IMG/VR virus record: IMGVR_UViG_3300028177_000001
Span: 62,001 to 126,000 of that record
Direction: 5' to 3' (one strand)
Length of the DNA stretch: 64,000 nucleotides
This document shows positions 9,932 through 55,713 of the stretch, piece by piece (the first letter of the stretch is position 1; each line of letters begins with the position of its first letter). The notes below the pieces were generated by a model. It was not told where the DNA came from and made no database searches. It saw only the letters and a program-made list of their open reading frames with translations. A program made the position numbers and the translations under genes.

Positions 9932-10486
9932 TTAGACCGTCACTTCCACTTCGACCTGGGGGGCTGAGGTGGGGTTGATAACGTCGGTGTCCTTGATCAG
10001 GAACATGCACTGAGGACAGCCCAAGAGCTTGTCGCTGGCCCCGCCACGCCGCTTGTAGATGGCCTTCTTGAGAGGGGGAGCGCCTTCACACCGAGGGCAA
10101 CAGGGACGACCCGAGTCACACTCGGACTTGTCCATCCGGTACTTGCGGTCTCGGGAGGCCCAGTACAACGCCTTGCGAGCGAATGCCTGGGCTACCCGAG
10201 AAGGAACCGGTCCGCCTGGGACGCTGACTGTCTCGGCGCCACCCGCACCCGTGTTGGTGTGGGTGGGGTTCGCCGACCCGTCGTTGTCCATCCTCTGAAG
10301 GTCCTCGACCGGGAAGCGACGGTTGCCCGTCGACATCTCCACATCAACCATGCCGATGGCGGGCCACACTGCTGTGACACGTCCGGCCTGGCTGTCGAAC
10401 ATACCGAACGGAACCACCACTCCCCCTACGGAGAACTCGGCAGCTTTCGCTTGGTAGTCGATGAAGTTGTCTGCTTCCCGCTTCAA
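9932..10486 (-). CDS. Head-associated protein with C-terminal zinc ribbon
   Basis: CPRC...CPQC. Carries the tag variant SRVAQAF. Confidence 0.6.
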   Translation of the reverse strand: MKREADNFIDYQAKAAEFSVGGVVVPFGMFDSQAGRVTAVWPAIGMVDVEMSTGNRRFPVEDLQRMDNDGSANPTHTNTGAGGAETVSVPGGPVPSRVAQAFARKALYWASRDRKYRMDKSECDSGRPCCPRCEGAPPLKKAIYKRRGGASDKLLGCPQCMFLIKDTDVINPTSAPQVEVEVTV

Positions 10487-10494
10487 GAGAGCCC

Positions 10495-11682
10495 CTACTG
10501 GAACAGGTTGAAGTGAACGGATGCCTTCTTGGAAGACTCTTCTTCCTCGACGACCTCTTCGACCTCTTCCTCAGCGGCTTCGCGGGGAAGCTGCGAGGAA
10601 GCGAGCTTGCCGCTCATGATGTCCTTGGCCACGCCCATGAACTCGCCGTGAACCTTCTCGACGGAGCGGCTGGAGCCTGCGACGATGCGGGCTGCGTTCT
10701 GCACCACCTGCACCATCTTGCGCCAGTTCTTCAGAAGGAGGCTCTGGAAGCGAGCGAGGAGATCGGCGAGACCGGCCACCTTCTCGGAAGCGGTGCGCAG
10801 GGCGCGATCTTCGAGCTCGAAGCCCTTGAAGGCGATCGCCATCGTCTTGTTGGTGTCGCGAAGAGCGTCCGTGGTCTCGTTGATGAACTCGGAGACCTCA
10901 GCACCGTACTTCTCGGAGATAGCGTTCATCAGCTCCTTCTGGACCTGCGTGGCGGTGCGCTTGCGCTCAACCACCTTGAGCATCGCCCGAGCCTCCACCA
11001 GAGCGGTCTTGCGCTCGATGGTGATGTTGCCGACCTCGGAGAGCTTGTCCTTGTACTCCTTCTTGATGCCCTCGTGCGCGGCCTTGAGCTCCTTGTCCAG
11101 ACCCGCCTTCGCTTCGAGAAGAGGCGCCACTGCGGCGTCGATCTGAGCCTGAAGCTCCATGGCCTCAGTGTTGAGTGCATCCAGGCGACGGATCTGGTCC
11201 GTGAACTGGTCGTAGCCCTGCACAGTGACGTTGGGCATGGCCGCCGACTTGCTGTCGCTGAAGTAGGTCTCGGCAGCGGTCAGGAGGGAAGCGAACTTGC
11301 CCAGACCTCCGGACTCCTGCAGATCACCCAGCTCGTGGAACTCGGCCTGCTGGAAGTGGTCCGACATGTAGCCCGCCTCGTCCGGCTCGCTCTCAAGCGG
11401 TCCGGTCTCAGGCTCGGCGATCTCGTTCGGGTCGAAGTCTGCCTTCTTGGAAGACTCCTCGACGACTTCCTCTTCCTCGACTTCCTCGGAAGCGGTGACC
11501 GGGAAGTTGAGGACCGCCCGATTCTCGACCGCGTCGGAAATCAGGTCGCTCCGATAGGCGAAGTCGATAGCGATCTTCGGATCGATACCAAGGATGTCGG
11601 CGTTCTGCTGGACTGTGTCGGCGATCTTGTCGATGGCCACGGTCAGTTCGCGAGCACCCCGACGGGTCAGCTTACTGGGCAT
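10495..11682 (-). CDS. Acidic coiled-coil head/core protein
   Basis: Likely start MPSK at 11682 after AGGAG. EEVEEE..SSKKA linkers are shared with the scaffold. Confidence 0.65.
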   Translation of the reverse strand: MPSKLTRRGARELTVAIDKIADTVQQNADILGIDPKIAIDFAYRSDLISDAVENRAVLNFPVTASEEVEEEEVVEESSKKADFDPNEIAEPETGPLESEPDEAGYMSDHFQQAEFHELGDLQESGGLGKFASLLTAAETYFSDSKSAAMPNVTVQGYDQFTDQIRRLDALNTEAMELQAQIDAAVAPLLEAKAGLDKELKAAHEGIKKEYKDKLSEVGNITIERKTALVEARAMLKVVERKRTATQVQKELMNAISEKYGAEVSEFINETTDALRDTNKTMAIAFKGFELEDRALRTASEKVAGLADLLARFQSLLLKNWRKMVQVVQNAARIVAGSSRSVEKVHGEFMGVAKDIMSGKLASSQLPREAAEEEVEEVVEEEESSKKASVHFNLFQ

Positions 11683-11749
11683 TGAAGTACTCCTGAAGAA
11701 GGAAAAGCTTGAGCGGGGCGGCAGGGCCGACACACTATCGGTGTTGTGT

Positions 11750-11764
11750 ATAAAGGAGTTACCG
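11750..11764 (-). promoter_or_regulatory. Putative late promoter
   Basis: cggt aactcctt tat upstream of the core-protease-scaffold operon. Confidence 0.7.
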
Positions 11765-11839
11765 CGAAAGACCCGCTTCTGCTGCGAGAGAAGCGAGCTT
11801 TGGCTTGTAGAGGATCGGTTTTAGCGGTCGGAGGGAAAA

Positions 11840-14800
11840 CTACCCCCAGGGGGCAAAGTCCCAGGTCAAAGCAACCTTCTTTGCAGGGCCCTGCGCGTGC
11901 GCGTCAGCTCCCGCCCTGTCATCGAAGTAGTCCACGTCGCCCGCAGGGTTCTTTGCCCCGTACTTGCCCTCGTCCGTCTTCCAGACCGTGCCCGCTGCAT
12001 GCTCTTCCTCAACCACCTCCTTCTCGGAGGGCTGCGGCGCGGGCTTCTTCTCGGCGGGGGGCGGGGCAGAAGTCGGCTTTGCGGGGGTCTTCTTGGAAGG
12101 AGTCTTCTTGATGTGCTTGCCCAGCGCCTGGAGAAGGGTGTCCACCCAGCTCTTCTGTTCCTTCACGTCCTTCGGGAACTCCTTCTGCTTCTTGCCCACC
12201 TGCGCTCGGGTCTTCTTTGCCTCGGCGTCATGCTCACCCACCTTCGCGCCTGGGCCGACCTTGCGGGTTGTCGCGGGGTCAAGGAAGGCAGTGTCCATCA
12301 CCAAGAAGTCGATCATCATCTCCTTCATCATGGCGTGGTCGTCGGCCGACATGTTCTTGTTCTTTTCTGGGTCCGACAGAAGCTCAGCGATGGGGTACGC
12401 CGGGTGGTCGTCCGAAACCAGACCCAGGAACTGCGATCCTGTGAGGTCATCGTAGACATCGCGGATGAAAGCCTGGTCATCCGAACCGAGGCTCTCGTCG
12501 CCCCCCAGGGTGCCGATGCTCAGGATCTTGCGCAAGTTGCCGCCCGCATCCGCAGCGCCGACGAGCCTCGCCATCGAAGAACCCACCCCCTGGGCATCCT
12601 TTCCGTCTTCCAGGGCCCCTGCTACGACCAGACCCCTCTGGATAGCCTCTATCTCGATGCGTCGAGGGTCACCTTCTTTGAGGTCTTCCATCTCGCGAGC
12701 CAGCTTGTCCAGATGGCGGACACGCCCGTCCTGGTCCATCTGGCGGTACTTGGCCACAGCCGTTTCGGCGCGGGCCACCGCTACATCCTGAGCTTTTCGA
12801 AGATCGCCCTCCGTGAGAGGAGCACCAGATTCGGAGAGAGGGTTGTCCGCGTCGACCATCGGGTTGTCGATCACCTTCTCGTAGTGCTCGACCTTAGCCA
12901 GGAACTCGGCCATCTTCTTCGGATTAGCATGAAGCTTCTCCCCGACATCCCCCGTGTCCTCCAGGTCCTCTTGCGCTTGCTTTGCGTCCTTGATGAACTC
13001 CGCCAGGTCTTCCGGCGCTGCGGCGGCCAGGGCCGTGCGCGCTGCGTCCAGGGTTTCCTTGAAGACGGCGTATTGCTCAGGCTTGAGATCATTAATGGCT
13101 CGGGAGACCGTACTCTCGGAGGTCTCGGAAAGCACGTTCACGACGTTGTCGATCAACTCGGTTTTTGCCTTGCTCTCAGCCTTCTCCCTTTTCACCTTGG
13201 CCTTCGCTTCAGCCTCGGCCTTCGCTTCAGCCTCGGCTTCAGCCTTCGCCGCGCCAGCCTTCTCGGCTTCCTCTTCCAGAAGCTCTACGGCTGCCTCAGC
13301 GTCGCTCTTGTCGGAAAGACCCTCGGTGACACCCTTGATTTCGTCCTCAGCCAGGCCCAGAGCCAGATAGCGGTCCATCAAGGACTTCTGGAAGTCCTCA
13401 AACTTCTTCGGGTCTGGGTCGTCGTCGGAGCCGGGCAGGTTGCTGGGGTCTGGCTTCGGAGGAACCTCCGCCTTGCCCCCGTCGTCCTTCGGAGAATCGC
13501 CTTCCGAAGCGTCTCCCTCCTCGAGAGACTCGTACTCACTGCCTCGGTCACGTAGGGTGTCCTCAGTGACCTCAGTGACCTGCCCTGTGTCCTTCTTCCG
13601 AACCCGAACCTTCTTAGTCTCCTCGGCCAGAAACCTCAAGGCGACCCGACGGGCCGAGGAGTCCTTGTAGTTCTGGGACCGGTCCTTCTTGTCCTGCTTC
13701 TCGTCCGGGTCCTGTTCCTCGTCCGTCTCTTTCACCTTGCGGGTCTGGAGGTCAGTACGAGGCGGCTTCTTGGTAGGGGACTGCTTGATGAGGTCCTCGG
13801 TTGCCTCGTCTTCCTTCTCAAGGCGGGTCTTCGTACTGAACAGAGTCCGCAAGGACTCATTGAACATCGGGTCGTTGATTGAGCCCTGGTCTCGCGAAGC
13901 CCAGCGCAAGGCGACCCGAAATGCAGACGCATGCATCTTCTTGCCCTTGTTCCGATCTTCCTGGACCCAGCGCCAGAACTGACCCACAGGCATAGTGAGG
14001 AACTCACCGTCCTTGAAGAAGCCGGGACGGTCGTACTGCTTCTTGTAGAGACCGATCGCCTCCTCGGGTGAGTCGAACCCGAGCATGACCTTGTCCTCGT
14101 CGAACTTTCCAGTCCCAGGGTCCTGCTGGTGGATGACGACGACCACCGAGGAGTCGTGGTTATCCCCCACGTACACGTCCAGCTTGTCCCCGTCAGTGCC
14201 CTCGGTCCCTCGGATCTCGCCGTAGTGGGCGTGCATCTTGATCGACCACTCGGTCCCGTCGGGTGCCTCGCCAGAGCGGGTGGCACCCTTCTTGTTCTCA
14301 ACGTCGATCTGGATGCCCTGGAAGTCAAGGTAGCCCTCGAACGGGAACTCCTTCCGCTTTGCCTGGGGGGGCTCCACCTTCACCGGGTGGTGGTTGTGGG
14401 GGGCCTCAATGATGTCTTGGTTGCTGGCAGCAGTACGTCGCTGCTCCTGGTAGACATAGTCCAGGTATCCCCCGTCGGGGTTAATCTGACGGAGGGTTCG
14501 CCCCTTCCGGATCTCCCCCAGATACCAGGCCCAGACTTCCGGGAACAGCTTGCTGTACGTGATCTTGATGGGGATATCCCGCCCCAAGATCTTCCCCGCC
14601 ATGGCTCGATGGTGACCGTCGGAGAAAGCCACCGTCCCGTCGCGGTGTACCAGAACCCCCACCGGCTCCGAGAAGTCCACGGTTTTCGCCCACTCGCGAG
14701 CTTCCCGAGATCGGGGGTTGAAGCCCCGCCACCACCCTGCCTGGTACTCCCCCACTCCGCTCTTCAGCTCTGACGCCGGGAACATCAGTCGCTGGCTCGC

Positions 14801-17800
14801 GGTCTTCGACCCCCAGCCGCTCTGGGCGAACCAGGCCTTCTGCTTTGCAGCTCGCTCCTCCATGATAGGCAGGCGAGGGTCTTCAGTGGGGATCGGCTGC
14901 CATTCCTCGTCCTTGGACATCCTCTCGCAGGGGAGCCCTTCGCAGGGAGTGTCGTTCCAGTGCTTCGAGAAACCGCCGAGGTTGACCTCGTAGGGACAAT
15001 CACCACACCTGTCGTAGAACTTGGCGCCGTCGTGCAAGATGCCCATGCAGTGAGGGCAGTGGGAGGTGATGTCGAAGGCTGCGGTCTTCACAGAAGCACC
15101 CCGAACCTTCGGGTGTCCGTACAGTGCCTTCTGGACCATGCCCAGACTTGCGAGCTGACGCTGATAGTAGCCGTCGCCCTCCCACTTGATGTCCTTCCCC
15201 TTGAGGACAGCGCGGACTACCTTCTCGTCCGTGATGCGGGGAGCTCCCGCAGACTCAAACATCCGAGCTACCTTATGGGAAGCCTCTCCGTACCAGCCCC
15301 GTTGCTTGATTAGAGCCATGGTCTGCCGCACCACTGCAGACTTCGCAGCGCGGGTGCCGTCCGTGCCCATCAAGGCCAACTTGTTTCCGAACGGGGTGAC
15401 CTTGTACGCAATAAAAGCGTCCGGAGCCTGGTCGGCATCCAGGTCAATCAGCTTGAGGATCTTGTACTTGCTCAGAAAAGTGGCAAGGTCTGGGATGTGG
15501 GTGCCCAACTGCCCGTACGAGATGGAGTAGAGGTCCCAGACGGTCTCTCCCTCAGCCCGTTCAAGATCTGAGGTGGAAACATCAATCCACTTATTCTTAG
15601 GGAACTGGACCCGAGCATATCGCTCAGCCACTCGGTGGGCGGACACAAACCCCTGCTTGTTCAGCTTCTGGGGGGGCTTCCCCTCCTTCAAGAAAGCCTC
15701 CTCCAGGCCGGGAACCAGGTAGCTGGAGCGCAGCATCGAAGGGGCATGACCTACGGCCTCCGCAGCGCCCTCGAGAGCCTCCTTGAACTCTGCTTTGAGG
15801 ATCTTCTCCCGCTCCTTCTTGTCCGAGGGCAGCGTGCCCCCCTTCGAGCGGACTTGCTTCAGCCGGGCCTTCATTTCCTCGTTGGCGTGCAGGCCCCGGA
15901 GGTCCTTCGCTGTGACGCCGAAGTCCTTCAGGTATGCGTTCACGCCCTCTGCCCCGACCACGCAGTCGTCGCCCTCACAAAGGATTTGGTCGTCCGGCTT
16001 CTTGCCCTTGAGGGCTGCCTTCAAGGCTGAGACCACCTTTGCCGAGGAGATCTTCTTCTCCTGGTCGACCCCGGACTTGCCCGTGTACTTGATGGTGGCG
16101 GTGTTCCCGGAGAAGGAGACGTGCTTCTTGAGCCAGCCCGTGACCCCGAAGTGGCCGTCCTTGGCGGATTCGGAGTTGCCTACCCGCTCGTAGGTCTCGT
16201 CAATAAGCGCCACTGCAAGGGCTGTGAGGCGCTCTCTGGGGTCGTCGGAGGTGAGCTCGCGCTTGTACTGAGATCGGAGATCCGGGAGGGCCTGGCGGAT
16301 CTTCTCGACCCGGTTCGCCTTTTCCTTGTCCTGCTTGTCGTGGTGCTGCTCGGTGTACTCGTACACCACCCGCTCGACACCATCAGGGGTCTTCACCTTC
16401 TTCTTGGACTTGAAAGCTGCGGACGCGTTGATGTCCCTCCAACGACCCCCCTCGCTGCGAAACGAGACGATCTCGGGCTCCTTGAAACCTTTGGGGGCGA
16501 GAGTGGACACATCCCAACCGTGCGCCATAGACCATGCGTGGTCGCGGGCCTCCTGGATGTCATCCGCAAAGAACTCGAAGCTCTCCTCTCGGCCTGTGGA
16601 GTCTCTGATCAGCAATTGGTACTTGTTCGATGGGGCGACCCCACCAGGCAACCGAACCCACCGACGGCGGATTCCCGACCCTTGCGGGGTGAATCCGGAG
16701 CGCTTGTACCATGCAGCCAATTGTGCAGAGGACAGGTTCTTAGAACCCACCGCTGCTGGGATCAGGGAAAGCTCTGTGTCCGTACTATCCGCAAGGCGGA
16801 GGATCTCCTTCAGGACAGTGGAACCCGCTCCCCGACCAGAACAATCACGGGGGTCCTCCAGCTGAATCATGACCAGGTGTGCGCGACCCTGCTTGGGCTG
16901 GATCACGGTATGGACTCTACAATCCTGGAACTCCCAGAAACGGTGTCCAGGCTTCTGGGGGTCTTCGGGCTCCGCCGACAGTGCGCGGTAGCCTGTGAAG
17001 AACCTCGAGAGAGAGGCGACCCTAACAGCGGAAGACTGGATAACAAGCTGCTTGCGGAGCTTGCGCACCTGCTGGCCCAGCTGCTGAGAAGGAGCCTTGT
17101 TCTGATACAGGGTCCAGAGCTGCCGAACAACCCCAGGCAGCGGCCTCAGCTTCTCTGTTAGAGTGCCCGTCTTGTCCAGGCCAACCGCCTCCTCGAGGAA
17201 TGCCTCGGCCGTGAGGAGGTGCTTGCGGATGCAGTCTGGACAGAACTTCGCCGGGTGCGCCAGATGGTCCTCGAGCAGCAGGAGCTGCTTCGCTGCCTCC
17301 CTCAGGTTGAAGAGGGGGTCCATGATGGGCAGCTTCGACGCCGCCTTCTTGAAGGGCTTCGTCTCGAACTTCCCGTCTTCGCTGAGCTCGGTGTATTTGA
17401 ACACCTTCAGTACCACCTTGGGCTTGTATCCCGCAGGGAGGTCCGCCTCATAGCCGAGATACTCGGTGTCTCCGGGCAGGATGTAGAACAACACCTCCTT
17501 CGCTGTGGAGTCAAGCACCATCTGGCTCGAGGTGATCATGTTGTCCGTATTTCGGACCATGTTGTTCGGGTCGGCGCGGTCCTTCTTCCGCTTCCCGTAG
17601 AGAGCAGGCGCGATGTCAGCGGGGGACTTGAGACCCCGGAGCGTCTTCTGCGCCTGGTTCCTACGTGTCACCGAGGAAAGGTAGTCGTCTGAATCGTGGG
17701 TGTACCCCGCATTTTCGTGCGCGAACCCGTGGTTGGTCCGAGTGTGGATTTGATCCCCGCGCACTGTCTTGGTCACGCAATCGTGCTTAGACGTGTGCTC

Positions 17801-18232
17801 GATGCTCAGGGTCTTGTCGGGAGATACCAGGAAGGTATGCCCCTTGACACCGCCCTGGTACTCGCACGCAATAGCCAGAGCCTCATCGAGGCTCTTCTGC
17901 TCCAGGACCTTTAGGATCCGAGCTCCGTCCTTCGACTTCTTGCCCACTTCCTTGACGAGACGCTTCTCGGCCTCGTCGCGGGCCACCTGCAAGGCGGAGT
18001 TGACAACGCCGATGCCGAACTCGTTCAGGCCTTCGACCCAGCCCGTCCCCTCATCCTTGAGATACAGAACCTCAACGCCCTCGCGGATCTCGTGGTAGAT
18101 CTTTACCTTGGGGGCGTAGTTCCGGTCGCGGTTCTTCAGCAAACACCGATGGCCTCCCCATTGCCCCGCAGCAATGATGCAGGCAGTTCTGCCCTGCATC
18201 ATCGCCACCACCCTCGCGGGGGAGGGCTTCAC
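11840..18232 (-). CDS. 2130-aa polyvalent protein: Ntn-hydrolase, GNAT, topoisomerase IB, ParB-like, inorganic pyrophosphatase-like and acidic C-terminal domains
   Basis: Ntn: C-IIAAG..KNRDR..EGLNEFG..RTNH. GNAT: GRGAGS..WYKRSGF. Topo IB: RVGN/GKSG/KDLR/GH/SY pentad. ParB/Srx: DGHHR. PPase: YGEIRGTEGTDGDKLDVYVG..FDEDKVMLG. Confidence 0.85.
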   Translation of the reverse strand: MKPSPARVVAMMQGRTACIIAAGQWGGHRCLLKNRDRNYAPKVKIYHEIREGVEVLYLKDEGTGWVEGLNEFGIGVVNSALQVARDEAEKRLVKEVGKKSKDGARILKVLEQKSLDEALAIACEYQGGVKGHTFLVSPDKTLSIEHTSKHDCVTKTVRGDQIHTRTNHGFAHENAGYTHDSDDYLSSVTRRNQAQKTLRGLKSPADIAPALYGKRKKDRADPNNMVRNTDNMITSSQMVLDSTAKEVLFYILPGDTEYLGYEADLPAGYKPKVVLKVFKYTELSEDGKFETKPFKKAASKLPIMDPLFNLREAAKQLLLLEDHLAHPAKFCPDCIRKHLLTAEAFLEEAVGLDKTGTLTEKLRPLPGVVRQLWTLYQNKAPSQQLGQQVRKLRKQLVIQSSAVRVASLSRFFTGYRALSAEPEDPQKPGHRFWEFQDCRVHTVIQPKQGRAHLVMIQLEDPRDCSGRGAGSTVLKEILRLADSTDTELSLIPAAVGSKNLSSAQLAAWYKRSGFTPQGSGIRRRWVRLPGGVAPSNKYQLLIRDSTGREESFEFFADDIQEARDHAWSMAHGWDVSTLAPKGFKEPEIVSFRSEGGRWRDINASAAFKSKKKVKTPDGVERVVYEYTEQHHDKQDKEKANRVEKIRQALPDLRSQYKRELTSDDPRERLTALAVALIDETYERVGNSESAKDGHFGVTGWLKKHVSFSGNTATIKYTGKSGVDQEKKISSAKVVSALKAALKGKKPDDQILCEGDDCVVGAEGVNAYLKDFGVTAKDLRGLHANEEMKARLKQVRSKGGTLPSDKKEREKILKAEFKEALEGAAEAVGHAPSMLRSSYLVPGLEEAFLKEGKPPQKLNKQGFVSAHRVAERYARVQFPKNKWIDVSTSDLERAEGETVWDLYSISYGQLGTHIPDLATFLSKYKILKLIDLDADQAPDAFIAYKVTPFGNKLALMGTDGTRAAKSAVVRQTMALIKQRGWYGEASHKVARMFESAGAPRITDEKVVRAVLKGKDIKWEGDGYYQRQLASLGMVQKALYGHPKVRGASVKTAAFDITSHCPHCMGILHDGAKFYDRCGDCPYEVNLGGFSKHWNDTPCEGLPCERMSKDEEWQPIPTEDPRLPIMEERAAKQKAWFAQSGWGSKTASQRLMFPASELKSGVGEYQAGWWRGFNPRSREAREWAKTVDFSEPVGVLVHRDGTVAFSDGHHRAMAGKILGRDIPIKITYSKLFPEVWAWYLGEIRKGRTLRQINPDGGYLDYVYQEQRRTAASNQDIIEAPHNHHPVKVEPPQAKRKEFPFEGYLDFQGIQIDVENKKGATRSGEAPDGTEWSIKMHAHYGEIRGTEGTDGDKLDVYVGDNHDSSVVVVIHQQDPGTGKFDEDKVMLGFDSPEEAIGLYKKQYDRPGFFKDGEFLTMPVGQFWRWVQEDRNKGKKMHASAFRVALRWASRDQGSINDPMFNESLRTLFSTKTRLEKEDEATEDLIKQSPTKKPPRTDLQTRKVKETDEEQDPDEKQDKKDRSQNYKDSSARRVALRFLAEETKKVRVRKKDTGQVTEVTEDTLRDRGSEYESLEEGDASEGDSPKDDGGKAEVPPKPDPSNLPGSDDDPDPKKFEDFQKSLMDRYLALGLAEDEIKGVTEGLSDKSDAEAAVELLEEEAEKAGAAKAEAEAEAKAEAEAKAKVKREKAESKAKTELIDNVVNVLSETSESTVSRAINDLKPEQYAVFKETLDAARTALAAAAPEDLAEFIKDAKQAQEDLEDTGDVGEKLHANPKKMAEFLAKVEHYEKVIDNPMVDADNPLSESGAPLTEGDLRKAQDVAVARAETAVAKYRQMDQDGRVRHLDKLAREMEDLKEGDPRRIEIEAIQRGLVVAGALEDGKDAQGVGSSMARLVGAADAGGNLRKILSIGTLGGDESLGSDDQAFIRDVYDDLTGSQFLGLVSDDHPAYPIAELLSDPEKNKNMSADDHAMMKEMMIDFLVMDTAFLDPATTRKVGPGAKVGEHDAEAKKTRAQVGKKQKEFPKDVKEQKSWVDTLLQALGKHIKKTPSKKTPAKPTSAPPPAEKKPAPQPSEKEVVEEEHAAGTVWKTDEGKYGAKNPAGDVDYFDDRAGADAHAQGPAKKVALTWDFAPWG

Positions 18233-20988
18233 GGTTGGCCTCGCCTGCGGCGAACTTCAACCACACTGCCGCGCATCTCAAGCAGGCGGGCCACCCGCTG
18301 CACGCTGGCTTCGGGCAGGGGTTCCCTAAGAGACACCCTCTCGCCGAAGGGGATCACGTGCTTCTTGGGAAGCCCCCAGACCTCCATCTCGCCGAACTGC
18401 CAGCTGCCGGTCGGAGCCACCAGCTTCATGTCGGAGTGAGGGTCGTCCAGATACGCAATCGTGGAGTGAGGGTTGTACCGAGGGAACTTGTCGGCGACAT
18501 CGAAGCCCGCTCCCTCAAGCTTTGCCCAGACCTGGTCGCGAACCGCGCTCAGATCCTTCGAAAACCGGACGGTGCTGAACACCACCTTGCCTGTGGGAGT
18601 CACAAACCTGTCCAGTTCCCCCAGGGAGGCTTGCACCGGGGCGTCCAGGTCTACCAGAGCCGTCTCCAGAACCTGAAGAAACTCGTCCTGCCTCGCCTTC
18701 GGAACAGCCCCCACGTACAGGAAAGTGACATGCTGGGGCGAGGTGTCCTCTTCCTTTCTGGGGAACTGGGCGGAGATCTCCTTCGGAACAGGGATGAAGA
18801 GCCCAACACCGCTGCCGTCTCCGGTCTCCGCTGCCATGCGGACTTCTCTGGGGATCGCCGAGTTCTGGGAAGGAAGGTGGAAGTCCTCAGGCGAGCAGAT
18901 CAGCTCGTGCGCAGGCTGGTGGATGGGGAACGTCTGGATCTTGAGAGGACGGCCCAGCGCCTTGGATGTAGCCTTCAGGTCAGACTCGTACGTGGTGATG
19001 TTCTCGTTCTCCCAGATGTCAATCTCACTCACCGTGTTGAGACCGGCCAGAAGGTTGCGCAACACCACGACCTTGAACCGAGCCGCTGACATACCGGGGT
19101 TGAAGTACATCGCGTCAAACCGGAGTCCCTTCTGTCCCAGGAGCTCCTTCACCCGCTTGCTGTGCCTGCGGATGCGCCCCGTGACCACGACGGTGTAGGT
19201 GCTTGCCTCGCGGATCGCTTTCTTGGCTTCCTGCACGGGGGTGGGGATCCAGTAGTTCGACGAGGGCCGATCGGGCACACAAGGCTCGCCAAGGGACTCC
19301 TCCCGCACAAAGAAGGAGAAGGGACCGTCGTCCAGCTCCGAACCCTTCCACCAGGTCGGTGTCTTCTCCCAGGAACGGAACAGCGTTCCGTCAAAGTCGA
19401 ACATCGCGATCTTGGTGTAGCTGCGAGCGATCTTGACTGAGCCCTGGCGGGGCACACCCAGAACCGCCTCGGCGATCGTCGCGCCCCACTTCTGCTTCAG
19501 GCCGTCAGAGTTCATTTCCAGTTCCCTTGAGATCATTTGCTTCAGGCGCGAGGCCTGCTGCGCCAGGTCGGGGTTGTCCAGCAAGAGCTTCTGGCCGATC
19601 TGCCTCACTTGAGCCCCGAGTCTGCCCATGTCCCGAAGCTCGAGGTCGTACTTCCGAGCCAGGTCGGGAACGAAACTCTTGTCCTTGTATGCGTTGCCTG
19701 GGTTCTTGAGCATACCCAGGAACTCCCAGGCGTCATCCCGCTCCATCCCCAGGGTGATCTCGCGAACCCGAACCTGCTCGCTTGAGGGCAAGAACTGGAT
19801 GCTGGCACCCAGAGGAAGACCCACGTCCAGAAGCCCGAACACGAGATCCATGCGCTGGTCGCGAACGTAGTTCTCAAGAGTGGAGCGGAAGCCCTTGTCC
19901 TTTAGGATCAGTTCCCGTACCGGCTCCAGCAGTCCCAGGTCCTCCATCATGGCCAGCGCCTTCTTCCAGGTGCTCTCGGTGAGAACGATCTGGGTGAGAA
20001 GCTGGGCGAGGTGAGACGAGGGGATGTTTTTGAGCTTCGGCGCGTTCTGCTTGATGGCAGCGCGAGTGTCCGGGGTGAGCTTGTGTCCGTACCGGAGGGC
20101 GAACTTGATCACCCGGATCATTCGACTGGGGTCATCCGAGAAGGTCTTGCCTGGGTCCGCCGGGCACTGCATCCGACCCTCGGCCAGGTCCCGGAGTCCG
20201 CACCCCGTCAGATCGAGGATGTCCTTCTTGTCTGGGCCGTTCGCCAGGGCCATCAAGCGGATCAGCAGGGTGTTGTAGGTAAGCTCTCGCCGGTAGACAT
20301 CGTCCTGGATTGTTGACGGCGCCACGCCCGTGGGCTTGTACCCGCCCTCCTCGTAGGACTCGGTCCGGGCGTTTGCAATCTCGATTTCCTCGCCCTCCAT
20401 GTCAAGCCCGTTGAGATCCCAGGGCTCAAGCACCTTCAGAAGAACGACGCCCCACTGGTTGGTCTTCTTGTTCATCCGCGCAGGCACCGCACGAATCAGC
20501 TTGTCCGCGAACCATTCCGAATCATGCCCCAGGTTGACCGCGTCAACGACCGCGTCCACATCCTTGATAGGCCGGTCCAGAACGAAGTCCCGTACAGCAC
20601 CTCCGACCACGTAGACGTGCTTGCCCGCCTTGGGTCCGAGCGTCCGAGCGAACCCCGACAGGAACTTCATCAGCGCGACGGACTTCTTGTGAGCAAGAGA
20701 GGCATGCAGGAACTTCGCGGCCACCCGGCTGTCCGGCTGCGACGCCTGCTTAGGCTCCTCACCGTACTTCTTGCCCACGACCCCGCTCTTCGCCTTCCGC
20801 TCCTTAACGATCTCGCGATCACCCTCCGCCTTCTGCCAGGGTCCGTAGTGCTTACCGCAGAACCACGCACGTCCTCGGCCGTCCGCCCAGATGCACTCGT
20901 GCTCCGGGGAGCTCTTACACCCCTCGTGCATGCACTGGCTGAACGGCGCGTGCCCTCGGGCAACGCGGCTGGCCGAGGGCTGGATCAA
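18229..20988 (-). CDS. tRNA nucleotidyltransferase (CCA/polyA class II) + HAD phosphatase + 2H phosphoesterase fusion
   Basis: NTase: VVGGAVRD..DVD, ARTESY, DDVYRRELTYN, DDPSRMIR. HAD: FDFDGTLF..VVTGR. 2H: HVTF and HSTI. Confidence 0.85.
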   Translation of the reverse strand: MIQPSASRVARGHAPFSQCMHEGCKSSPEHECIWADGRGRAWFCGKHYGPWQKAEGDREIVKERKAKSGVVGKKYGEEPKQASQPDSRVAAKFLHASLAHKKSVALMKFLSGFARTLGPKAGKHVYVVGGAVRDFVLDRPIKDVDAVVDAVNLGHDSEWFADKLIRAVPARMNKKTNQWGVVLLKVLEPWDLNGLDMEGEEIEIANARTESYEEGGYKPTGVAPSTIQDDVYRRELTYNTLLIRLMALANGPDKKDILDLTGCGLRDLAEGRMQCPADPGKTFSDDPSRMIRVIKFALRYGHKLTPDTRAAIKQNAPKLKNIPSSHLAQLLTQIVLTESTWKKALAMMEDLGLLEPVRELILKDKGFRSTLENYVRDQRMDLVFGLLDVGLPLGASIQFLPSSEQVRVREITLGMERDDAWEFLGMLKNPGNAYKDKSFVPDLARKYDLELRDMGRLGAQVRQIGQKLLLDNPDLAQQASRLKQMISRELEMNSDGLKQKWGATIAEAVLGVPRQGSVKIARSYTKIAMFDFDGTLFRSWEKTPTWWKGSELDDGPFSFFVREESLGEPCVPDRPSSNYWIPTPVQEAKKAIREASTYTVVVTGRIRRHSKRVKELLGQKGLRFDAMYFNPGMSAARFKVVVLRNLLAGLNTVSEIDIWENENITTYESDLKATSKALGRPLKIQTFPIHQPAHELICSPEDFHLPSQNSAIPREVRMAAETGDGSGVGLFIPVPKEISAQFPRKEEDTSPQHVTFLYVGAVPKARQDEFLQVLETALVDLDAPVQASLGELDRFVTPTGKVVFSTVRFSKDLSAVRDQVWAKLEGAGFDVADKFPRYNPHSTIAYLDDPHSDMKLVAPTGSWQFGEMEVWGLPKKHVIPFGERVSLREPLPEASVQRVARLLEMRGSVVEVRRRRGQP

Positions 20989-23312
20989 AAGTCCCAGCCC
21001 CCGAAGATAACCTCAGCCACCTTCTCGTGTTCTGGGAAGTCTGGGGAGACTCCTTCCAGGTTGGAGTTGCGCAGGCCGAACTCGGCGGCGTCGTATGCGG
21101 GAGCGAACATCGACTGAGTCTGCTCACCGTCGCTCATGTTCGCGACTCGGACGTTCGCAGTCTTGAGCTGCTGCAGCTCCGGCCCCGTGGTGTCTTCCAG
21201 GATTGCCTTGTTGTAGGTCCCACACTTGCGGGTGCCGTTCTCCAGAGTGCGCACCATGTTGCACCCCGCGCAACGATCCATTGCTGCCACGGCGGGGAGA
21301 GCGTTGGCCCGGTGCTTCAGGGCTCCCTTCTCGCAACCGGCCATTCCGGTGGGCGACGCATAGGCGGAAGCTTCCACGTACAAGAAGCCCGCGCCGCCCT
21401 CGTGGGCCTGCCTCAGTTCCTGCAGACCGTCCGCCATAGCTGTCTGAACGCGGTCAGAGAACCGCTGGCCGATGAGCTCGTCGAGCCTGGCGCCTGCGTA
21501 GCCCTCGGACATGGCCTGGCGGACGTACCGCAGCCCCGCCCGAACATTGCGGAGACTGTCAGGGGAAGCCTTCTTGGCAACTGCCCTCTGGAACTGCGTG
21601 CCCTCGTAGGTACGGTTGTCGTCGAGCTCCTCCAGAGCTCCGGTCTTGGTCAGAAGCGGATCCAGGTACTTCGATGCAGACGGAACCATGTCCGCCGGGA
21701 TCAAGCGACGAATCTCCTCTGCCAGACGCTTGCCTCGCAGCCCGGACTTGATCACCCGAGCCACCTTGCGAACGGCGACCTTCACCCGCTCTTCAGCGCG
21801 CTCGGCTGCAACCCGCTGAAGGTTCTGGTCGTGGCGGGCCACCCGAGCCTGCCGACCTTCCCGACGCTGACGCCGAGCAGAGATATCCCCAGCCTGTCCC
21901 TGGTTGGGAGCCCCGCTAAAGCCAGCAGTGCGCAGCCACTCTGATGCCTGCTCCAGAGCCCGGTTGACCTCCGACTCGCGACGTGCCTCCCGCGCCGCCA
22001 GGGCCGCGTCCTTCTGAGCCCCTCGCTGGTCGACCTCGGCCTGGCTGCTCGCAGCGCGAGAGCGAGTTGCCTGAAGGCGAGCATCCAGAAGGGCCTGGCT
22101 TCCAGCCTGACCCTGATTCACGGCTCCGGAGAAGTCCCTCGACTGGGCGAGCTTGATGAGACGCACCCCGGCCTGAACCTTACGCTCAGGACTGGCCTCA
22201 GCTGCCAGGATACGGTTGCACGCCTCCTGCGAGAAGAACCCGTCGCGGGCCCAGCGCTTGATTTGAGCATGCGCCGACGCGGTCTTGCGAGCCAGGTGCT
22301 GGACCTGGGGGTCCTCAATCTGCAACTTCTTGTCGGCCAGGAAGCCTTCCCGGACAGCTTCAGAGTGCTGGGGCAGCCACGTCTGGGATGAGTTCTTCGA
22401 CGGAATCTCAAGGAAGGCTCGCTGGAGCCTGTCCCGATCCGAGCCTTCCCAGGTCGGGACCAGTGCTGCGATCCGAGCTTCAAAGCGCGGGAAGTAGAAG
22501 TCGGCCGCTTCCTTCCAGGGGATCTGGGTGACCGCGTGCTTGCCTGTGTACCCGCACCGACCGTTCTGGATCCAGGTAGCCTGCTCCATCTCGCTGGCGG
22601 ACACGAGAACGTACCGAGCCCGAGAAGCATGCTTCTTGACAGCCGTGGACCACTTGCCCGTGCCGTACCCAGGATAGGCAGAGGCGCGGATGTAGACGTT
22701 GCCTGCCAGGCCGTGCTCGGCGCGCACCCTCCGAATGAAGGGGGCGATACGCCCCATCTCTTCACCCATGCTCTCAAGGGCCTGCTTGCACACGACCTCG
22801 ATGTCCTGACCCTCGGCCGACCGACGCATGGCGTGAGCTACCACAGCCCGCATCTGCCTTGTTGTCGCCTTCTTGGTCTGCGGAGCATCCGCAGTGAGGG
22901 ACTCCTCGTATCGGGCCTGGTTGAGATCGCGGGACACGTGTCCGCGTCCGTCCGTGCGTCGGTTCACACCCCAGGCTTCCACCAGCTCTGGGATTATGGT
23001 GTCGTTGGTGCTGTGGGGAAGCCGCTCAGGATCCTGGGAAACTGTAGGGTTCAACCAGTTCAGGTCCGCCAGTTCTTCACCCTGGAGCATCTCCGTGAGG
23101 TCCATGTCCTCCGCCGCCCCCCTGGTCAACCCGGTGGGCAACGCAGGCGACGGGAGAAGCTCAGGATCGAACACGGCTTCAAGCACGCCCATCCCGTACT
23201 CCATGTCGGGATACTCACCAACCCCGAAGCCGGACCCCAGGGTGGACGTCAAGAGGTCCGAAGGAAACTCCGAGTTGCCCAGCTGGTCGATGGTCGAGGT
23301 CTTGTCACTCAT
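20985..23312 (-). CDS. Large putative head protein with Cys clusters
   Basis: 775-aa ORF translationally coupled within the operon, with an internal FSGA.NQGQAG duplication and KKA/KTA linkers. Confidence 0.6.
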   Translation of the reverse strand: MSDKTSTIDQLGNSEFPSDLLTSTLGSGFGVGEYPDMEYGMGVLEAVFDPELLPSPALPTGLTRGAAEDMDLTEMLQGEELADLNWLNPTVSQDPERLPHSTNDTIIPELVEAWGVNRRTDGRGHVSRDLNQARYEESLTADAPQTKKATTRQMRAVVAHAMRRSAEGQDIEVVCKQALESMGEEMGRIAPFIRRVRAEHGLAGNVYIRASAYPGYGTGKWSTAVKKHASRARYVLVSASEMEQATWIQNGRCGYTGKHAVTQIPWKEAADFYFPRFEARIAALVPTWEGSDRDRLQRAFLEIPSKNSSQTWLPQHSEAVREGFLADKKLQIEDPQVQHLARKTASAHAQIKRWARDGFFSQEACNRILAAEASPERKVQAGVRLIKLAQSRDFSGAVNQGQAGSQALLDARLQATRSRAASSQAEVDQRGAQKDAALAAREARRESEVNRALEQASEWLRTAGFSGAPNQGQAGDISARRQRREGRQARVARHDQNLQRVAAERAEERVKVAVRKVARVIKSGLRGKRLAEEIRRLIPADMVPSASKYLDPLLTKTGALEELDDNRTYEGTQFQRAVAKKASPDSLRNVRAGLRYVRQAMSEGYAGARLDELIGQRFSDRVQTAMADGLQELRQAHEGGAGFLYVEASAYASPTGMAGCEKGALKHRANALPAVAAMDRCAGCNMVRTLENGTRKCGTYNKAILEDTTGPELQQLKTANVRVANMSDGEQTQSMFAPAYDAAEFGLRNSNLEGVSPDFPEHEKVAEVIFGGWDF

Positions 23313-24249: not shown

Positions 24250-24272
24250 TCTTGCCCTGGGAGGACGTTGTC

Positions 24273-24866: not shown

Positions 24867-24904
24867 GGTCTACAGCCTACCAGAGGGTTTGCAGAGAGCG
24901 GGGC

Positions 24905-24919
24905 ATAGGCCGATCACCG
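24905..24919 (-). promoter_or_regulatory. Putative late promoter
   Basis: cggt gatcggcc tat upstream of the operon containing the cargo polyproteins. Confidence 0.65.
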
Positions 24920-26146: not shown

Positions 26147-26152
26147 GCTTCC

Positions 26153-40338: not shown

Positions 40339-40353
40339 ATAGTAGACCTACCG
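40339..40353 (-). promoter_or_regulatory. Putative late promoter (identical to the 38247 copy)
   Basis: cggt aggtctac tat. Confidence 0.7.
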
Positions 40354-41856: not shown

Positions 41857-41932
41857 AGGGTTCCTCCGTAGAAGAACCCTACCCCGGTCGAACCGCCTTA
41901 GCTACCCGGCTGTAGGCTTTTGTAAGCCGGGG

Positions 41933-47122: not shown

Positions 47123-47220
47123 GAGAGATCCTGTTCTTGCCTGAGCAAGGGGCTCAGTGAGGTACAAGCGCCGAAGATTTGACCACCGGGCACACCGGGG
47201 AATACTCTTGGGCTGGATCT

Positions 47221-47235
47221 ATAAACAGGACACCG
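47221..47235 (-). promoter_or_regulatory. Putative late promoter for the sheath gene
   Basis: cggt gtcctgtt tat. Confidence 0.7.
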
Positions 47236-47242
47236 GGGTGTT

Positions 47243-47707: not shown

Positions 47708-47735
47708 GAACTTCTCCGTGCCCACTCTACCCGCG

Positions 47736-47993
47736 CTACTCCCCCAGGGAGGAGAGCAGGTCGATGTACGAGAGATACTGCCCAGGCATGTCTGTGGGCG
47801 GGGCCACCTCCGCAGCATCGAACCGGCGCGCAAACAGAATGAAGAGCGCGGTGATGTCGGAGCCGGAGTAGCCTTCCTCCTGCAGTGTCTGTACAAACTG
47901 CAGGGTGTTGGCCGCGACAGCCTTCGACCAGAGAACGTCCGGGCCGAGGCTTCTAACGTAGACCGCCCACTCTTCGAGATTCTGCGGGTTCAT
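47736..47993 (-). CDS. Hypothetical protein
   Basis: 85-aa ORF coupled to the helicase stop. Confidence 0.55.
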   Translation of the reverse strand: MNPQNLEEWAVYVRSLGPDVLWSKAVAANTLQFVQTLQEEGYSGSDITALFILFARRFDAAEVAPPTDMPGQYLSYIDLLSSLGE

Positions 47994-54916: not shown

Positions 54917-54943
54917 GGGGAATCTCCGGAAGCGAACTTCGGA

Positions 54944-54958
54944 ATAGGGAGGCTACCG
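54944..54958 (-). promoter_or_regulatory. Putative late promoter
   Basis: cggt agcctccc tat. Confidence 0.7.
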
Positions 54959-54960
54959 TA

Positions 54961-55389
54961 TTACAGCAGCACGTCGTAGCCGACAGTGCCTGTAACGGTA
55001 GCGCCTGCTTCGATGGTGAACCCAGTGGTGGTCTTGCTGATGACTCTGAAGGGAGCGAAGACATCCGAAACGAGGTGCACCCGGTAGGTGGTGCCAGACA
55101 GCGCGGTGGCGAAGGTAACAGTCTTGGAGGTCTCAGCCGTAAAGGTGAGGGTCCCGTTGACTGCGCTGGTGAGTGCCAAGAGGTCCTCCACTTGTGTCAG
55201 GGCAGAGGCAATATCAGCCACCACCGTCTGAGGGATCTCAGTGTACGGGCTGACCACCAGCCCGTAGGGGTCCTGAATGTCCCGGACCAGCAGGGTTCCT
55301 GCCTGGTTCTGCATCAGGGTGAACGTGTACAGGTCCGGGCTTGTTCCCGACCGGTACGTGAAATCAGCCTGGATCAGTGTGGCTGCCAT
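54961..55389 (-). CDS. Small virion protein
   Basis: C-terminal KTTTGFTI...TGTVGY is shared with 26209..27768. Confidence 0.6.
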   Translation of the reverse strand: MAATLIQADFTYRSGTSPDLYTFTLMQNQAGTLLVRDIQDPYGLVVSPYTEIPQTVVADIASALTQVEDLLALTSAVNGTLTFTAETSKTVTFATALSGTTYRVHLVSDVFAPFRVISKTTTGFTIEAGATVTGTVGYDVLL

Positions 55390-55392
55390 CAG

Positions 55393-55713
55393 CTACCAGA
55401 TCCCCGTGGTGTCGCAGCCCGTCTTGCTGAGCCACTTTTCCAGAGCTACGATCCCCTCTCGGTCTGTTGACCAGAGATCCATTCGCGGACCCTTCACGTC
55501 GATCCCCAGATCCGCAATGCGGTCTACGTTTGCGATGCGAGCGCGTCCGTCACGGAATGCCTTGAGGTAGCTCGGCAGGTTCCGAACCCCGAAGGAAATG
55601 TCGAGGACTGCAATCCGGTACTCCGGCCGAACACGTTCTTCCAGCCACTTTGCGGCGACGCGCTTGGCCATTGCCACACGTACCACGGAGGGCTTGGTTC
55701 GGTTCTGGGCCAT
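55393..55713 (-). CDS. Small late protein with N-terminal tag
   Basis: Start MAQNR after AGGAG. Carries PSVVRVAMAKRVAAKW. Confidence 0.6.
   Translation of the reverse strand: MAQNRTKPSVVRVAMAKRVAAKWLEERVRPEYRIAVLDISFGVRNLPSYLKAFRDGRARIANVDRIADLGIDVKGPRMDLWSTDREGIVALEKWLSKTGCDTTGIW

What the first reader, a model, noticed from the sequence alone, without database searches (positions are those of the whole stretch)
9932..55713. Shared 'RVAxR[YFW]' peptide tag across unrelated late proteins: candidate capsid-loading signal for injected cargo
Seen: the motif [RK]-[VL]-[AS]-x-[RK]-[YFW], usually preceded by a Ser/Pro-containing stretch, occurs 10 times in 7 otherwise unrelated proteins. Sites are RVALRF 13631, RVALRW 13901, RVAERY 15617, RVAAKF 20710, RVASRY 23326, RVAVRF 24160, RLAARY 34797, RVSSRY 35380, RVASRY 37882 and RVAAKW 55645. 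Degenerate copies sit at protein termini (MKPSPARVVA, MIQPSASRVAR, ASVQRVAR, PSRVAQAF). The DNA uses different codons, so conservation is at the protein level. Copies lie at termini or between domains. I found no full match in the sheath, fibres, terminase, portal or replication genes. Known: T4 internal proteins share an N-terminal capsid-targeting sequence. Inference: this is a portable amphipathic-helix address tag that docks diverse enzymes into the prohead for co-injection with DNA. Unlike the T4 sequence, it is used internally and several times per polyprotein.
Basis: partly seen in the sequence, partly recalled or inferred. Interest (0 to 1): 0.9.

Follow-up and report, generated by a model that had tools for sequence, protein, structure and literature searches.

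The report
Shared helix tag on phage head cargo
A giant phage and its uncultured relatives put the same short helix-forming peptide (R-V-A-x-R-aromatic) on many unrelated enzymes encoded among the head genes, most likely as an address label that loads them into the capsid, but this rests on sequence analysis alone.

Summary
All 10 sites sit at the stated coordinates, in frame in long minus-strand ORFs. Shuffling predicts 0.5 sites. Among about 59,000 reduced-alphabet patterns this one ranks first.

The window is part of a 288-kb uncultured jumbo phage whose capsid protein, portal and protease resemble those of Bacillus phage G. The tagged proteins are unrelated outside the motif. They include two polyvalent proteins (topoisomerase IB + InPase; CCA-adding + HAD + 2H), a C39-like peptidase, an ORFan and conserved head-module proteins.

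In relatives the motif is about 8-fold enriched. It is concentrated in these cargo-like classes and absent from portal, capsid protein, protease and one scaffold-like protein.

The motif lies at protein ends and at module junctions, and a helix N-cap (S/T/D-P) precedes it. It often lies next to a second, stricter motif, [KR]-x-A followed by S or G. That motif also recurs in the scaffold-like proteins and the protease, so it is the likelier protease cut site.

Best reading (confidence about 0.5): a portable capsid-docking helix that the prohead protease later cuts off. Main rival (about 0.25): the motif is itself the protease recognition site.

Packaging, the binding partner and cleavage are all untested. 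I rate it a new variant of a known kind.

The parts
13631..13648 (-). Tag RVALRF, aa 1529 of the 2130-aa polyvalent protein. It follows a charged linker.
13901..13918 (-). Tag RVALRW, aa 1439, 15 aa after the InPase domain (1300-1424). Ala-Ser dipeptides flank it on both sides.
15617..15634 (-). Tag RVAERY, aa 867, at the C-terminal edge of the topoisomerase IB module (631-833). Homology to relatives ends at aa 850-875.
20710..20727 (-). Tag RVAAKF, aa 88 of the 919-aa protein, at the start of the CCA-adding module. Homology to relatives starts at aa 80-97.
23326..23343 (-). C-terminal tag RVASRY of the 314-aa family protein, 6 aa before the stop.
24160..24177 (-). N-terminal tag RVAVRF of the 314-aa family protein. 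The model places it in a short helix (aa 23-35) between low-confidence, probably disordered, stretches.
24124..24132 (-). K-T-A, followed by G-E-V: candidate prohead-protease site between the N-terminal tag and the conserved core. It is near-invariant in the family.
   Evidence: K/R 98%, T 89%, A 97% of 117 members
23626..23634 (-). K-T-A after the acidic end of the core: candidate protease site upstream of the C-terminal extension and tag.
   Evidence: 80 of 108 family tails have such a site
34797..34814 (-). Tag RLAARY, aa 77 of a 333-aa protein of unknown function.
35380..35397 (-). Tag RVSSRY, aa 202 of the 316-aa protein. It lies just after the C39-like peptidase domain, which ends in an invariant M/R-A-S junction.
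37882..37899 (-). Tag RVASRY, aa 112 of a 377-aa ORFan.
55645..55662 (-). Tag RVAAKW, aa 27 of a 115-aa protein. Homologues conserve the N-terminal tag and lie within about 10 kb of the portal in relatives.
10181..10198 (-). Variant tag RVAQAF in the 184-aa protein encoded just upstream of the protease. Orthologues keep RVAxA[YFW] at the same place.
18280..18297 (-). Degenerate copy RVARLL just after the 2H module of the 919-aa protein.
11840..18232 (-). 2130-aa polyvalent protein: weak C45/AAT-like N-terminal module, topoisomerase IB, InPase and unknown modules.
18229..20988 (-). 919-aa polyvalent RNA-repair-like protein: CCA-adding/poly(A) polymerase, HAD_SAK_1 and 2H phosphoesterase.
23305..24249 (-). 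314-aa helical head-module protein with a tag at each end. Database gene callers start it at M18, giving 297 aa. It has 925 metagenome homologues and no Pfam family.
8425..9930 (-). Putative prohead protease. It has no RVAxR[YFW] tag but carries K-x-A and R-T-A-S type sites.
   Evidence: 34% identity to phage G gp19
7295..8413 (-). Acidic scaffold-like protein with three K-K-A sites, two of them after Glu-rich runs.
10495..11733 (-). Coiled-coil scaffold-like protein with an 'acidic run + SSKKA' unit near each end.
5490..6362 (-). Major capsid protein, a homologue of phage G gp27. It is one candidate receptor for the tag.
27818..29527 (-). Portal protein. It has no tag.

Best explanation
R-V-A-x-R-[Y/F/W] is a clade-specific short linear motif. 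It is usually preceded by an S/T/D-P or S-A helix cap and followed by L/A. It forms a short amphipathic helix: V, A, the aromatic residue and L/A make one face, bordered by the two basic residues.

Inferred mechanism:
1. The helix docks its carrier onto a component of the assembling prohead. The receptor could be the inner face of the capsid protein, the acidic scaffold-like proteins, or the conserved 314-aa family protein.
2. In this way enzymes encoded among the head genes are enclosed in the capsid.
3. A separate, stricter motif is the probable prohead-protease cut site. It reads [KR]-x-A followed by S or G and often comes after an acidic run. It lies between tag and cargo, and at module junctions.
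4. After assembly the tags would be cut off and the polyvalent proteins divided into modules.
5. Tag-plus-module cassettes have been shuffled among giant proteins, which explains several tags in one protein.

Shown: the motif, its enrichment, its gene-class specificity, its placement, its conservation and the neighbouring second motif. Inferred: docking, the receptor, cleavage and injection.
For: - Enrichment in the window: 10 sites against 0.5 expected, and top-ranked in two unbiased pattern tests.
- Enrichment in relatives: 63 sites against 7.8 expected in 290,063 aa.
- A scoring matrix trained on relatives alone ranks sites in the window proteins as its top hits.
- Class specificity in relatives, as hits per 10,000 aa: 7.0 in polyvalent-like, 7.5 in CCA/2H-like and 11 in 314-family proteins. 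Counts elsewhere are 0 in 24,085 aa of portal, 1 in 21,464 aa of terminase, and 0 in capsid protein, protease and the 372-aa scaffold-like protein.
- The carriers have domains that the literature assigns to virion-packaged phage polyvalent proteins: InPase and 2H.
- Sites coincide with homology-block boundaries.
- Around the CCA module the tag appears in N-terminal, internal or C-terminal settings in different relatives.
- C-terminal copies lie 4-12 aa from the stop. N-terminal copies lie within the first 15 aa.
- AF2 places the N-terminal tag in an isolated helix flanked by low-confidence, probably disordered, stretches.
- Tag position 3 tolerates A, V, L, S and M, whereas the Ala of [KR]-T-A|G is 97% conserved. 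The spacing between the two elements varies from 1 to 28 aa, so they are separate elements.
- The K-x-A motif recurs without the tag in the scaffold-like proteins and the protease, so cleavage at K-x-A would not require the tag.
- The tag also sits on an ORFan.
Against: - There is no virion proteomics, no cultured relative and no binding or cleavage data.
- The receptor is unidentified, and co-folding could not be run.
- 'R-V-A' also fits the [KR]-x-A pattern, so the tag could be a special class of cut site.
- Ala-Ser dipeptides are enriched on both sides of the tag.
- At some junctions, such as after topoisomerase IB, relatives keep K-x-A-[ST] but lose the tag. The tag is therefore dispensable there.
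- Phage G and Tunturi_5 share the head genes but show no enrichment in their first 50 kb.
- The structure models are of low to medium confidence (pLDDT 66 and 53).
Confidence: 0.5

Rival explanations
1. [quoted passage not shown] R-V-A would be P3-P1 and R-aromatic would lie on the primed side. It would mark where polyvalent proteins and propeptides are cut, with no docking role.
For: - Sites sit at nearly every module junction.
- R-V-A fits the [KR]-x-A pattern seen in the scaffold-like proteins, the protease N-terminus and the K-T-A|G site.
- Ala-Ser dipeptides are enriched next to the motif.
- In some relatives the two motifs merge, for example K-R-T-A-R-Y.
Against: - The full motif is absent from the usual protease substrates: capsid protein, portal, the protease and the 372-aa scaffold-like protein.
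- Position 3 is not strict (A, V, L, M or S), unlike the invariant Ala of K-T-A.
- The position after it is free.
- The helix cap, the helical periodicity and the AF2 helix do not suit a substrate that must bind in extended form.
- Copies 4-12 aa from the stop would release only a tiny peptide.
Confidence: 0.25
2. The motif is a structural junction helix that travels with shuffled modules. It might cap a domain or act as a linker or self-association element, with no shared binding partner in the prohead.
For: - Its placement at module boundaries and its spread with module shuffling fit this idea.
- In the 314-aa model the C-terminal copy is simply the end of a long helix.
Against: - The same six-residue pattern flanks unrelated folds and an ORFan.
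- It occurs at free N- and C-termini separated from the core by disordered spacers of variable length.
- It is restricted to particular gene classes. A generic linker would not be.
Confidence: 0.1
3. The motif is a shared docking peptide for a hub other than the capsid. Candidates are a host or phage protein met after injection, or a chaperone or other compartment during infection.
For: - Short shared peptides on DNA and RNA enzymes often bind hubs.
- One tagged gene lies next to a sigma-factor-like gene, outside the head block.
Against: - Tags occur in conserved head-module proteins, including one always encoded just upstream of the protease.
- Near-invariant candidate cut sites separate tag from core, which suggests the tags are removed before injection.
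- Homologues of the outlying gene lie within about 10 kb of the portal in relatives.
Confidence: 0.1

Closest known systems
Capsid targeting sequence of phage T4 internal proteins (Mullaney & Black 1996, as cited in PMC10052503)
   Same: A short peptide shared by several otherwise different head-internal proteins. It lies next to a prohead-protease site and is removed after loading. The N-terminal tag plus K-T-A|G of the 314-aa family has the same layout.
   Different: The sequence is unrelated. Here the tag is also C-terminal and internal, occurs several times per protein, and sits on giant multi-enzyme proteins. The candidate cut follows Ala, not Glu. The T4 function is demonstrated; this one is not.
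Encapsulin cargo-loading peptides (review PMC7355545)
   Same: A short conserved peptide, mostly terminal, on unrelated enzymes directs them into a shell of HK97-fold protein. The capsid protein here is a homologue of the solved phage G capsid protein.
   Different: Encapsulin peptides are not cut off, are usually single, and have other consensus sequences. Encapsulins have no portal, DNA or injection.
Herpesvirus scaffold C-terminal capsid-binding helix with its upstream maturation site (established knowledge, not tested here)
   Same: The order 'core, then a cut site at an Ala-Ser bond, then a short C-terminal amphipathic helix that holds the protein to the capsid shell' matches the C-terminal K-T-A-S + RV[AM]xRY tails of the 314-aa family.
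   Different: In herpesviruses the helix belongs to the scaffold only and is not shared by many cargo enzymes. The fold class of the protease here could not be established.
Propeptides and A-X-E cleavage sites of head and ejection proteins in phiKZ-like giant phages such as SPN3US (PMC10052503)
   Same: Many internal head proteins of a giant phage are processed by one prohead protease, and the propeptides are suspected to help targeting.
   Different: Those propeptides are long (20-254 aa), are almost always N-terminal, and share no docking motif. Cleavage follows Glu. That lineage has different head genes.
Phage-type polyvalent proteins (PMC5512222) and the phage P1 Dar system (PMC12810830)
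   Same: Multi-enzyme proteins with InPase and 2H domains, encoded near head genes and thought to be packaged and injected. [quoted passage not shown]
   Different: No shared loading peptide has been described for these. The cited paper proposes processing by built-in metallopeptidase domains, not by a shared junction motif.

Membership tests
Phage-type polyvalent proteins (Iyer et al. 2017) | Two or more unrelated effector or enzyme domains in one polypeptide | tested here: met
   Topoisomerase IB + InPase in the 2130-aa protein. PolyA_pol + HAD_SAK_1 + 2H in the 919-aa protein. Relatives combine the same modules in other orders.
Phage-type polyvalent proteins (Iyer et al. 2017) | Domains restricted to the phage type (InPase, 2H) and a neighbourhood of portal and terminase genes | tested here: met
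   The genes lie between the portal and the protease.
Phage-type polyvalent proteins (Iyer et al. 2017) | Packaged in the virion and delivered with the DNA | not testable with these tools
   No cultured relative and no proteomics.
T4-type capsid targeting sequence | A short peptide shared by several unrelated head-internal proteins | tested here: met
   Ten or more sites in seven or more unrelated proteins, conserved across the clade.
T4-type capsid targeting sequence | Strictly N-terminal, one copy per protein | tested here: not met
   Copies are N-terminal, C-terminal and internal, with up to three full copies per protein.
T4-type capsid targeting sequence | Removed by the prohead protease at an adjacent consensus site | tested here: inconclusive
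   A near-invariant [KR]-T-A|G lies after the N-terminal tag, and K-T-A-S/R lies before the C-terminal tag. Cleavage itself was not observed.
T4-type capsid targeting sequence | Sufficient to load a foreign protein into proheads | not testable with these tools
   This needs a fusion-protein experiment.
Encapsulin-type cargo-loading peptide | A conserved short peptide on unrelated cargo, together with an HK97-fold shell protein | tested here: met
   Motif. The capsid protein matches the phage G capsid protein, PDB 6wkk, at E 4e-66.
Encapsulin-type cargo-loading peptide | The peptide binds the inner face of the shell protein | not testable with these tools
   No complex prediction or binding assay was available.
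Prohead-protease cleavage motif | Occurs in the canonical substrates (capsid protein, scaffold, portal, the protease itself) | tested here: not met
   There are no full RVAxR[YFW] sites in these classes in the window or in relatives. The 412-aa scaffold-like class is the exception, with 3 hits. The K-x-A motif does occur in the scaffold-like proteins and the protease.
Prohead-protease cleavage motif | A strictly conserved residue before the scissile bond | tested here: not met
   Tag position 3 is A 70%, V 17%, plus L, S and T in the family's N-terminal tags, and M or L in its C-terminal tags.
Herpesvirus-type scaffold tail (cut site + capsid-binding helix) | A C-terminal amphipathic helix directly downstream of an Ala-Ser type cut site | tested here: inconclusive
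   The sequence arrangement is present in most 314-family tails. Binding and cleavage were not tested, and the protease fold is unresolved.

The most novel reading that the evidence does not exclude
This lineage of huge phages uses a two-part grammar: a portable docking helix plus a K-x-A cut site. With it, almost any enzyme module, ORFans included, can be loaded into the capsid and then released, and giant polyvalent proteins are built by stringing such cassettes together. The docking helix would copy the way a scaffold holds on to the capsid shell, as in herpesviruses. If so, the injected protein set of uncultured huge phages could be read directly from sequence.
Probability: 0.35. Interest if true: 0.8.

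Novelty: new variant of a known kind. Interest (0 to 1): 0.62.

Why it matters
How phages choose which proteins to enclose and inject is known for only a few model phages. For polyvalent proteins and for huge uncultured phages it is unknown.

A shared tag that can be recognised in sequence would do three things:
- It would allow the packaged, and probably injected, enzymes of these phages to be listed from metagenomes.
- It would give a direct experimental handle: fusing the tag to a reporter, and mutating it.
- It would explain how modules are shuffled between giant proteins.

It could also serve as a tool for loading foreign proteins into capsid shells. The RNA-repair and DNA-topology enzymes among the tagged proteins suggest what these phages need in the first moments of infection.

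Tried and rejected
Explanations rejected:
- Chance or amino-acid composition, by shuffles, permuted motifs and an unbiased pattern scan.
- A DNA repeat: codons differ between sites.
- Hidden paralogy: the carrier proteins show no similarity outside the motif.
- The protease's RVAFEF as a true tag copy. Orthologues conserve V-x-A-F-x-F in a different register, with an acidic residue at position 5.

Steps that gave nothing useful:
- Fold search with the 314-aa model found no match.
- The AF2 model of the protease was poor (pLDDT 53) and its fold search was empty, so the protease fold class is unresolved.
- The protease and the N-terminal module of the 2130-aa protein have no sequence match in PDB.
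- PHROG and Pfam gave nothing for the 333-, 369-, 377-, 410-, 519-, 775-, 818-, 946- and 1744-aa proteins, nor for the 1792-aa ORF left of the window.
- A scan with the helicase fetched only the same contig.
- The 377-aa protein has no homologue at all, so its tag conservation could not be tested.
- An exact-residue pattern scan was too sparse to be useful.

Limits:
- Phage G and Tunturi_5 show no enrichment in their first 50 kb. This bounds the clade that uses the tag.
- About 9 kb left of the window holds no copy of the motif, but those genes could not be named.
Full report
**What the window is.** The window is 62% G+C and nearly all genes are on the minus strand. It is identical to part of IMG/VR contig IMGVR_UViG_3300028177_000001, which is 288 kb. 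One of its proteins is also recorded on a 350-kb contig.

The head genes resemble those of Bacillus phage G:
- The major capsid protein (5490-6362) matches phage G gp27, PDB 6wkk, at E 4e-66.
- The putative prohead protease (8425-9930) matches a PHROG 'head maturation protease' family and phage G gp19.
- The portal is at 27818-29527 and the large terminase at 30451-32394.

The closest cultured phages are Tunturiibacter phage Tunturi_5 (38% portal identity) and phage G (27%). The only close GenBank record is an uncultured 485-kb phage. Two IMG/VR scans returned 72 loci that do not duplicate window sequence, flanking the portal or the protease of relatives.

The other frames of the 64 kb contain one further hit.
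- Shuffling predicts 0.51 sites, with a maximum of 3 in 1000 trials. The pattern ranks first of 360 position-permuted versions.
- It also ranks first in an unbiased scan of all five-position patterns in a reduced alphabet, with 10 observed against 0.64 expected. By my arithmetic that is P about 2e-9, or about 1e-4 after correction.
- Codons differ between sites, and the seven host proteins are unrelated outside the motif.
- A scoring matrix trained only on relatives ranks sites in the window proteins as its top hits. It adds RVAQAF in the 184-aa protein 9932-10486.

**Who carries it.** The main carriers are these:
- The 2130-aa protein (11840-18232) has topoisomerase IB and InPase domains.
- The 919-aa protein (18229-20988) has CCA-adding/poly(A) polymerase, HAD_SAK_1 and 2H phosphoesterase domains. 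InPase and 2H are described as restricted to phage-type polyvalent proteins that are probably packaged in the virion (PMC5512222).
- The 316-aa protein has a C39-like peptidase domain.
- The 377-aa protein has no homologue among 5.8 billion proteins.
- The 333-aa protein and the small 115-aa protein have no known function.
- The 314-aa helical protein has a tag at each end. Its family has 925 metagenome homologues and no Pfam entry.

**Clade-wide pattern.** In 768 non-identical ORF products from relatives (290,063 aa) the pattern occurs 63 times against 7.8 expected.

Sorted by homology to window proteins, the density per 10,000 aa is:
- 7.0 in polyvalent-like proteins
- 7.5 in CCA/2H-like proteins
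- 11 in the 314-aa family

By contrast there are no hits in 24,085 aa of portal, one in 21,464 aa of terminase, and none in capsid protein, protease, the 372-aa scaffold-like protein or the 519-aa protein.

Homologues of the 115-aa protein keep the N-terminal tag and lie within about 10 kb of the portal in relatives. Orthologues of the 184-aa protein keep RVAxA[YFW] at the same place, and that gene lies directly upstream of the protease. Phage G and Tunturi_5 show no enrichment in their first 50 kb, so the tag belongs to a narrower lineage.

**Placement.** Homology blocks shared with relatives end or begin at the tags:
- The topoisomerase module ends at aa 850-875; the tag is at 867.
- The CCA module starts at aa 80-97; the tag is at 88.
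- The 2H module ends at aa 880-889; a degenerate copy is at 898.

Around the CCA module, relatives have the tag directly before it, after it, or both. The tag can be at a protein's N-terminus, inside a giant protein, or at the C-terminus. Relatives arrange the same modules (CCA, 2H, PAP2, topoisomerase IB, GNAT) in different orders. The unit that moves therefore looks like 'module plus tag'.

**Shape.** The residues before the tag are enriched in S, A, P and T in the pattern of a helix N-cap: S/T/D, then P or A. The residue after the aromatic is L, A, V or M in about 75% of sites. V, A, the aromatic and L/A fall on one helical face (my inference from the i, i+1, i+4, i+5 spacing). In the AF2 model of the 314-aa protein (pLDDT 66) the N-terminal tag is a separate helix, aa 23-35, between low-confidence, probably disordered, stretches.

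K-[KT]-A occurs 30 times against 11.4 expected, mostly in head-block proteins.
- The two scaffold-like proteins (7295-8413, 10495-11733) contain repeated units of a Glu-rich run followed by SSKKA and then S, D or F. The same unit is conserved beside the protease in relatives.
- Protease orthologues conserve K-x-A at residues 5-7, an R-T-A-S type site near residue 30, and A-K-A-A-S after the catalytic domain.
- In the 314-aa family, [KR]-T-A-G-E-V at the start of the conserved core is almost invariant: K/R 98%, T 89%, A 97% of 117 members. It lies 1-28 aa after the N-terminal tag.
- At the other end of that family, the acidic end of the core is followed by G-K-T-A-[S/R]. The C-terminal tag then follows after 0-3 residues, or after a variable insert, close to the stop.
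- Near tags in general, [KR]-x-A-[S/T/...] occurs within 10 aa upstream in 17 of 64 sites against 3.9 expected. The Ala-Ser dipeptide is enriched upstream (16 against 3.0) and downstream (10 against 3.1).
- The C39-like domain ends in an invariant M/R-A-S in all relatives, and the modules downstream differ completely.
- After the topoisomerase module, relatives keep K-x-A-[ST] more faithfully than the tag.

**Interpretation.** The two motifs obey different rules. K-x-A has a strict Ala, follows acidic runs, and occurs in the proteins a prohead protease normally cuts. I take it as the probable cut site, by inference from analogy with other prohead proteases.

The tag has helix features and tolerates A, V, L, M or S at its third position. 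It occurs on either side of the K-x-A site at variable distance, and it sits at free protein ends only 4-12 aa from the stop. These features suit a docking helix better than a scissile site.

The layout 'tag, cut site, core' at N-termini repeats the logic of the T4 capsid targeting sequence. The layout 'core, cut site, short amphipathic C-terminal helix' repeats the way herpesvirus scaffold proteins hold on to, and are released from, the capsid shell (established knowledge, not tested here). Sharing one tag among unrelated enzymes is what encapsulin cargo does (PMC7355545).

I therefore favour a capsid-loading tag that is later removed, at about 0.5. Docking, the receptor, cleavage and injection are all inferred.

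**Rivals.** Because R-V-A also fits [KR]-x-A, the tag may be a special, extended cut site that marks polyprotein junctions (about 0.25). Its absence from the canonical substrates, the loose third position and the helix features speak against this. Its presence at many junctions and the flanking Ala-Ser dipeptides speak for it. A purely structural junction helix, or a docking peptide for some other hub, each get about 0.1.

**Novelty.** No paper found here describes a shared loading motif for polyvalent proteins or for phage-G-like huge phages. The principle is known from T4, encapsulins and herpesvirus scaffolds. The new points are the motif itself, its use at N-terminal, C-terminal and internal positions, several copies per protein, and its coupling to module shuffling in giant proteins. 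I class it as a new variant of a known kind.

**Limits.** Only 64 kb of this genome and windows of about 20 kb from relatives were examined. Relatives are not independent samples. Gene calls are simple ORF calls. Both structure models are weak, and the protease fold class could not be established. The three adjacent large genes overlap by 4 bases and were analysed separately.

Noticed in passing
7295-8413(-) and 10495-11733(-); also 52460-54916(-): The scaffold-like proteins carry repeated units of a Glu-rich run (such as EEVEEEVVEEEE) followed by SSKKA and then S, D or F. The unit is conserved next to the protease in relatives. The 818-aa protein shares the stretch 'KKA-(A)DFD..EI.EP..G.LE' with the 412-aa protein.
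   Followed up: partly
17333-18232(-), the N-terminal module of the 2130-aa protein: All relatives conserve the junction K-Q/T-A followed by C-I/V-I. Pfam gives a weak hit, below cut-off, to the AAT/C45 N-terminal-nucleophile hydrolase family (E 0.005). A cut after K-x-A would expose the Cys as the new N-terminus, as such hydrolases need.
   Followed up: partly
23305-24249(-): The 314-aa family has 925 metagenome homologues, no Pfam family, and no cultured phage apart from one uncultured GenBank record. Its most conserved stretch (K-T-A-G-E-V-R-F-I-K-D...) has low model confidence (pLDDT < 50), which suggests a disordered binding segment.
   Followed up: partly
L036:11708-20131 (relative): A 2808-aa polyvalent protein has an intein with a LAGLIDADG domain inserted in its CCA-adding module. 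It combines CCA, 2H, topoisomerase IB and GNAT domains. Other relatives add PAP2.
   Followed up: no
41807-47182(+) and 41933-47167(-): Two fully overlapping antisense ORFs of 1791 and 1744 aa. Only a weak DUF2460 hit on the minus strand hints at which one is the gene. PHROG gave nothing for the minus-strand one.
   Followed up: partly
8425-9930(-): Protease orthologues share an invariant Cys/His cluster (C184, C191, C194, C205, H207, C230, H232), possibly a metal site inside the catalytic region. A 240-aa helical C-terminal extension follows.
   Followed up: no
37099-38232(-): The tagged 377-aa protein has no homologue among 5.8 billion proteins, although the identical protein is recorded on four contigs of up to 350 kb.
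   Followed up: yes
35050-36000(-): The C39-like peptidase domain ends with an invariant Q-x-M/R-A-S in all relatives. After that point the sequence is unrelated between genomes, which looks like module swapping at a fixed junction.
   Followed up: partly
55761-56369(-) and 40348-41856(-): A small protein with sigma-70 region 4 lies next to the tagged 115-aa gene. A 502-aa protein has weak HNH/homing-endonuclease matches.
   Followed up: no
L079:14116-19491 (left of the window; the ORF starts near window 791 on the minus strand): A 1792-aa Gly-rich ORF runs off the left end of the window. It has no tag and no family match.
   Followed up: partly
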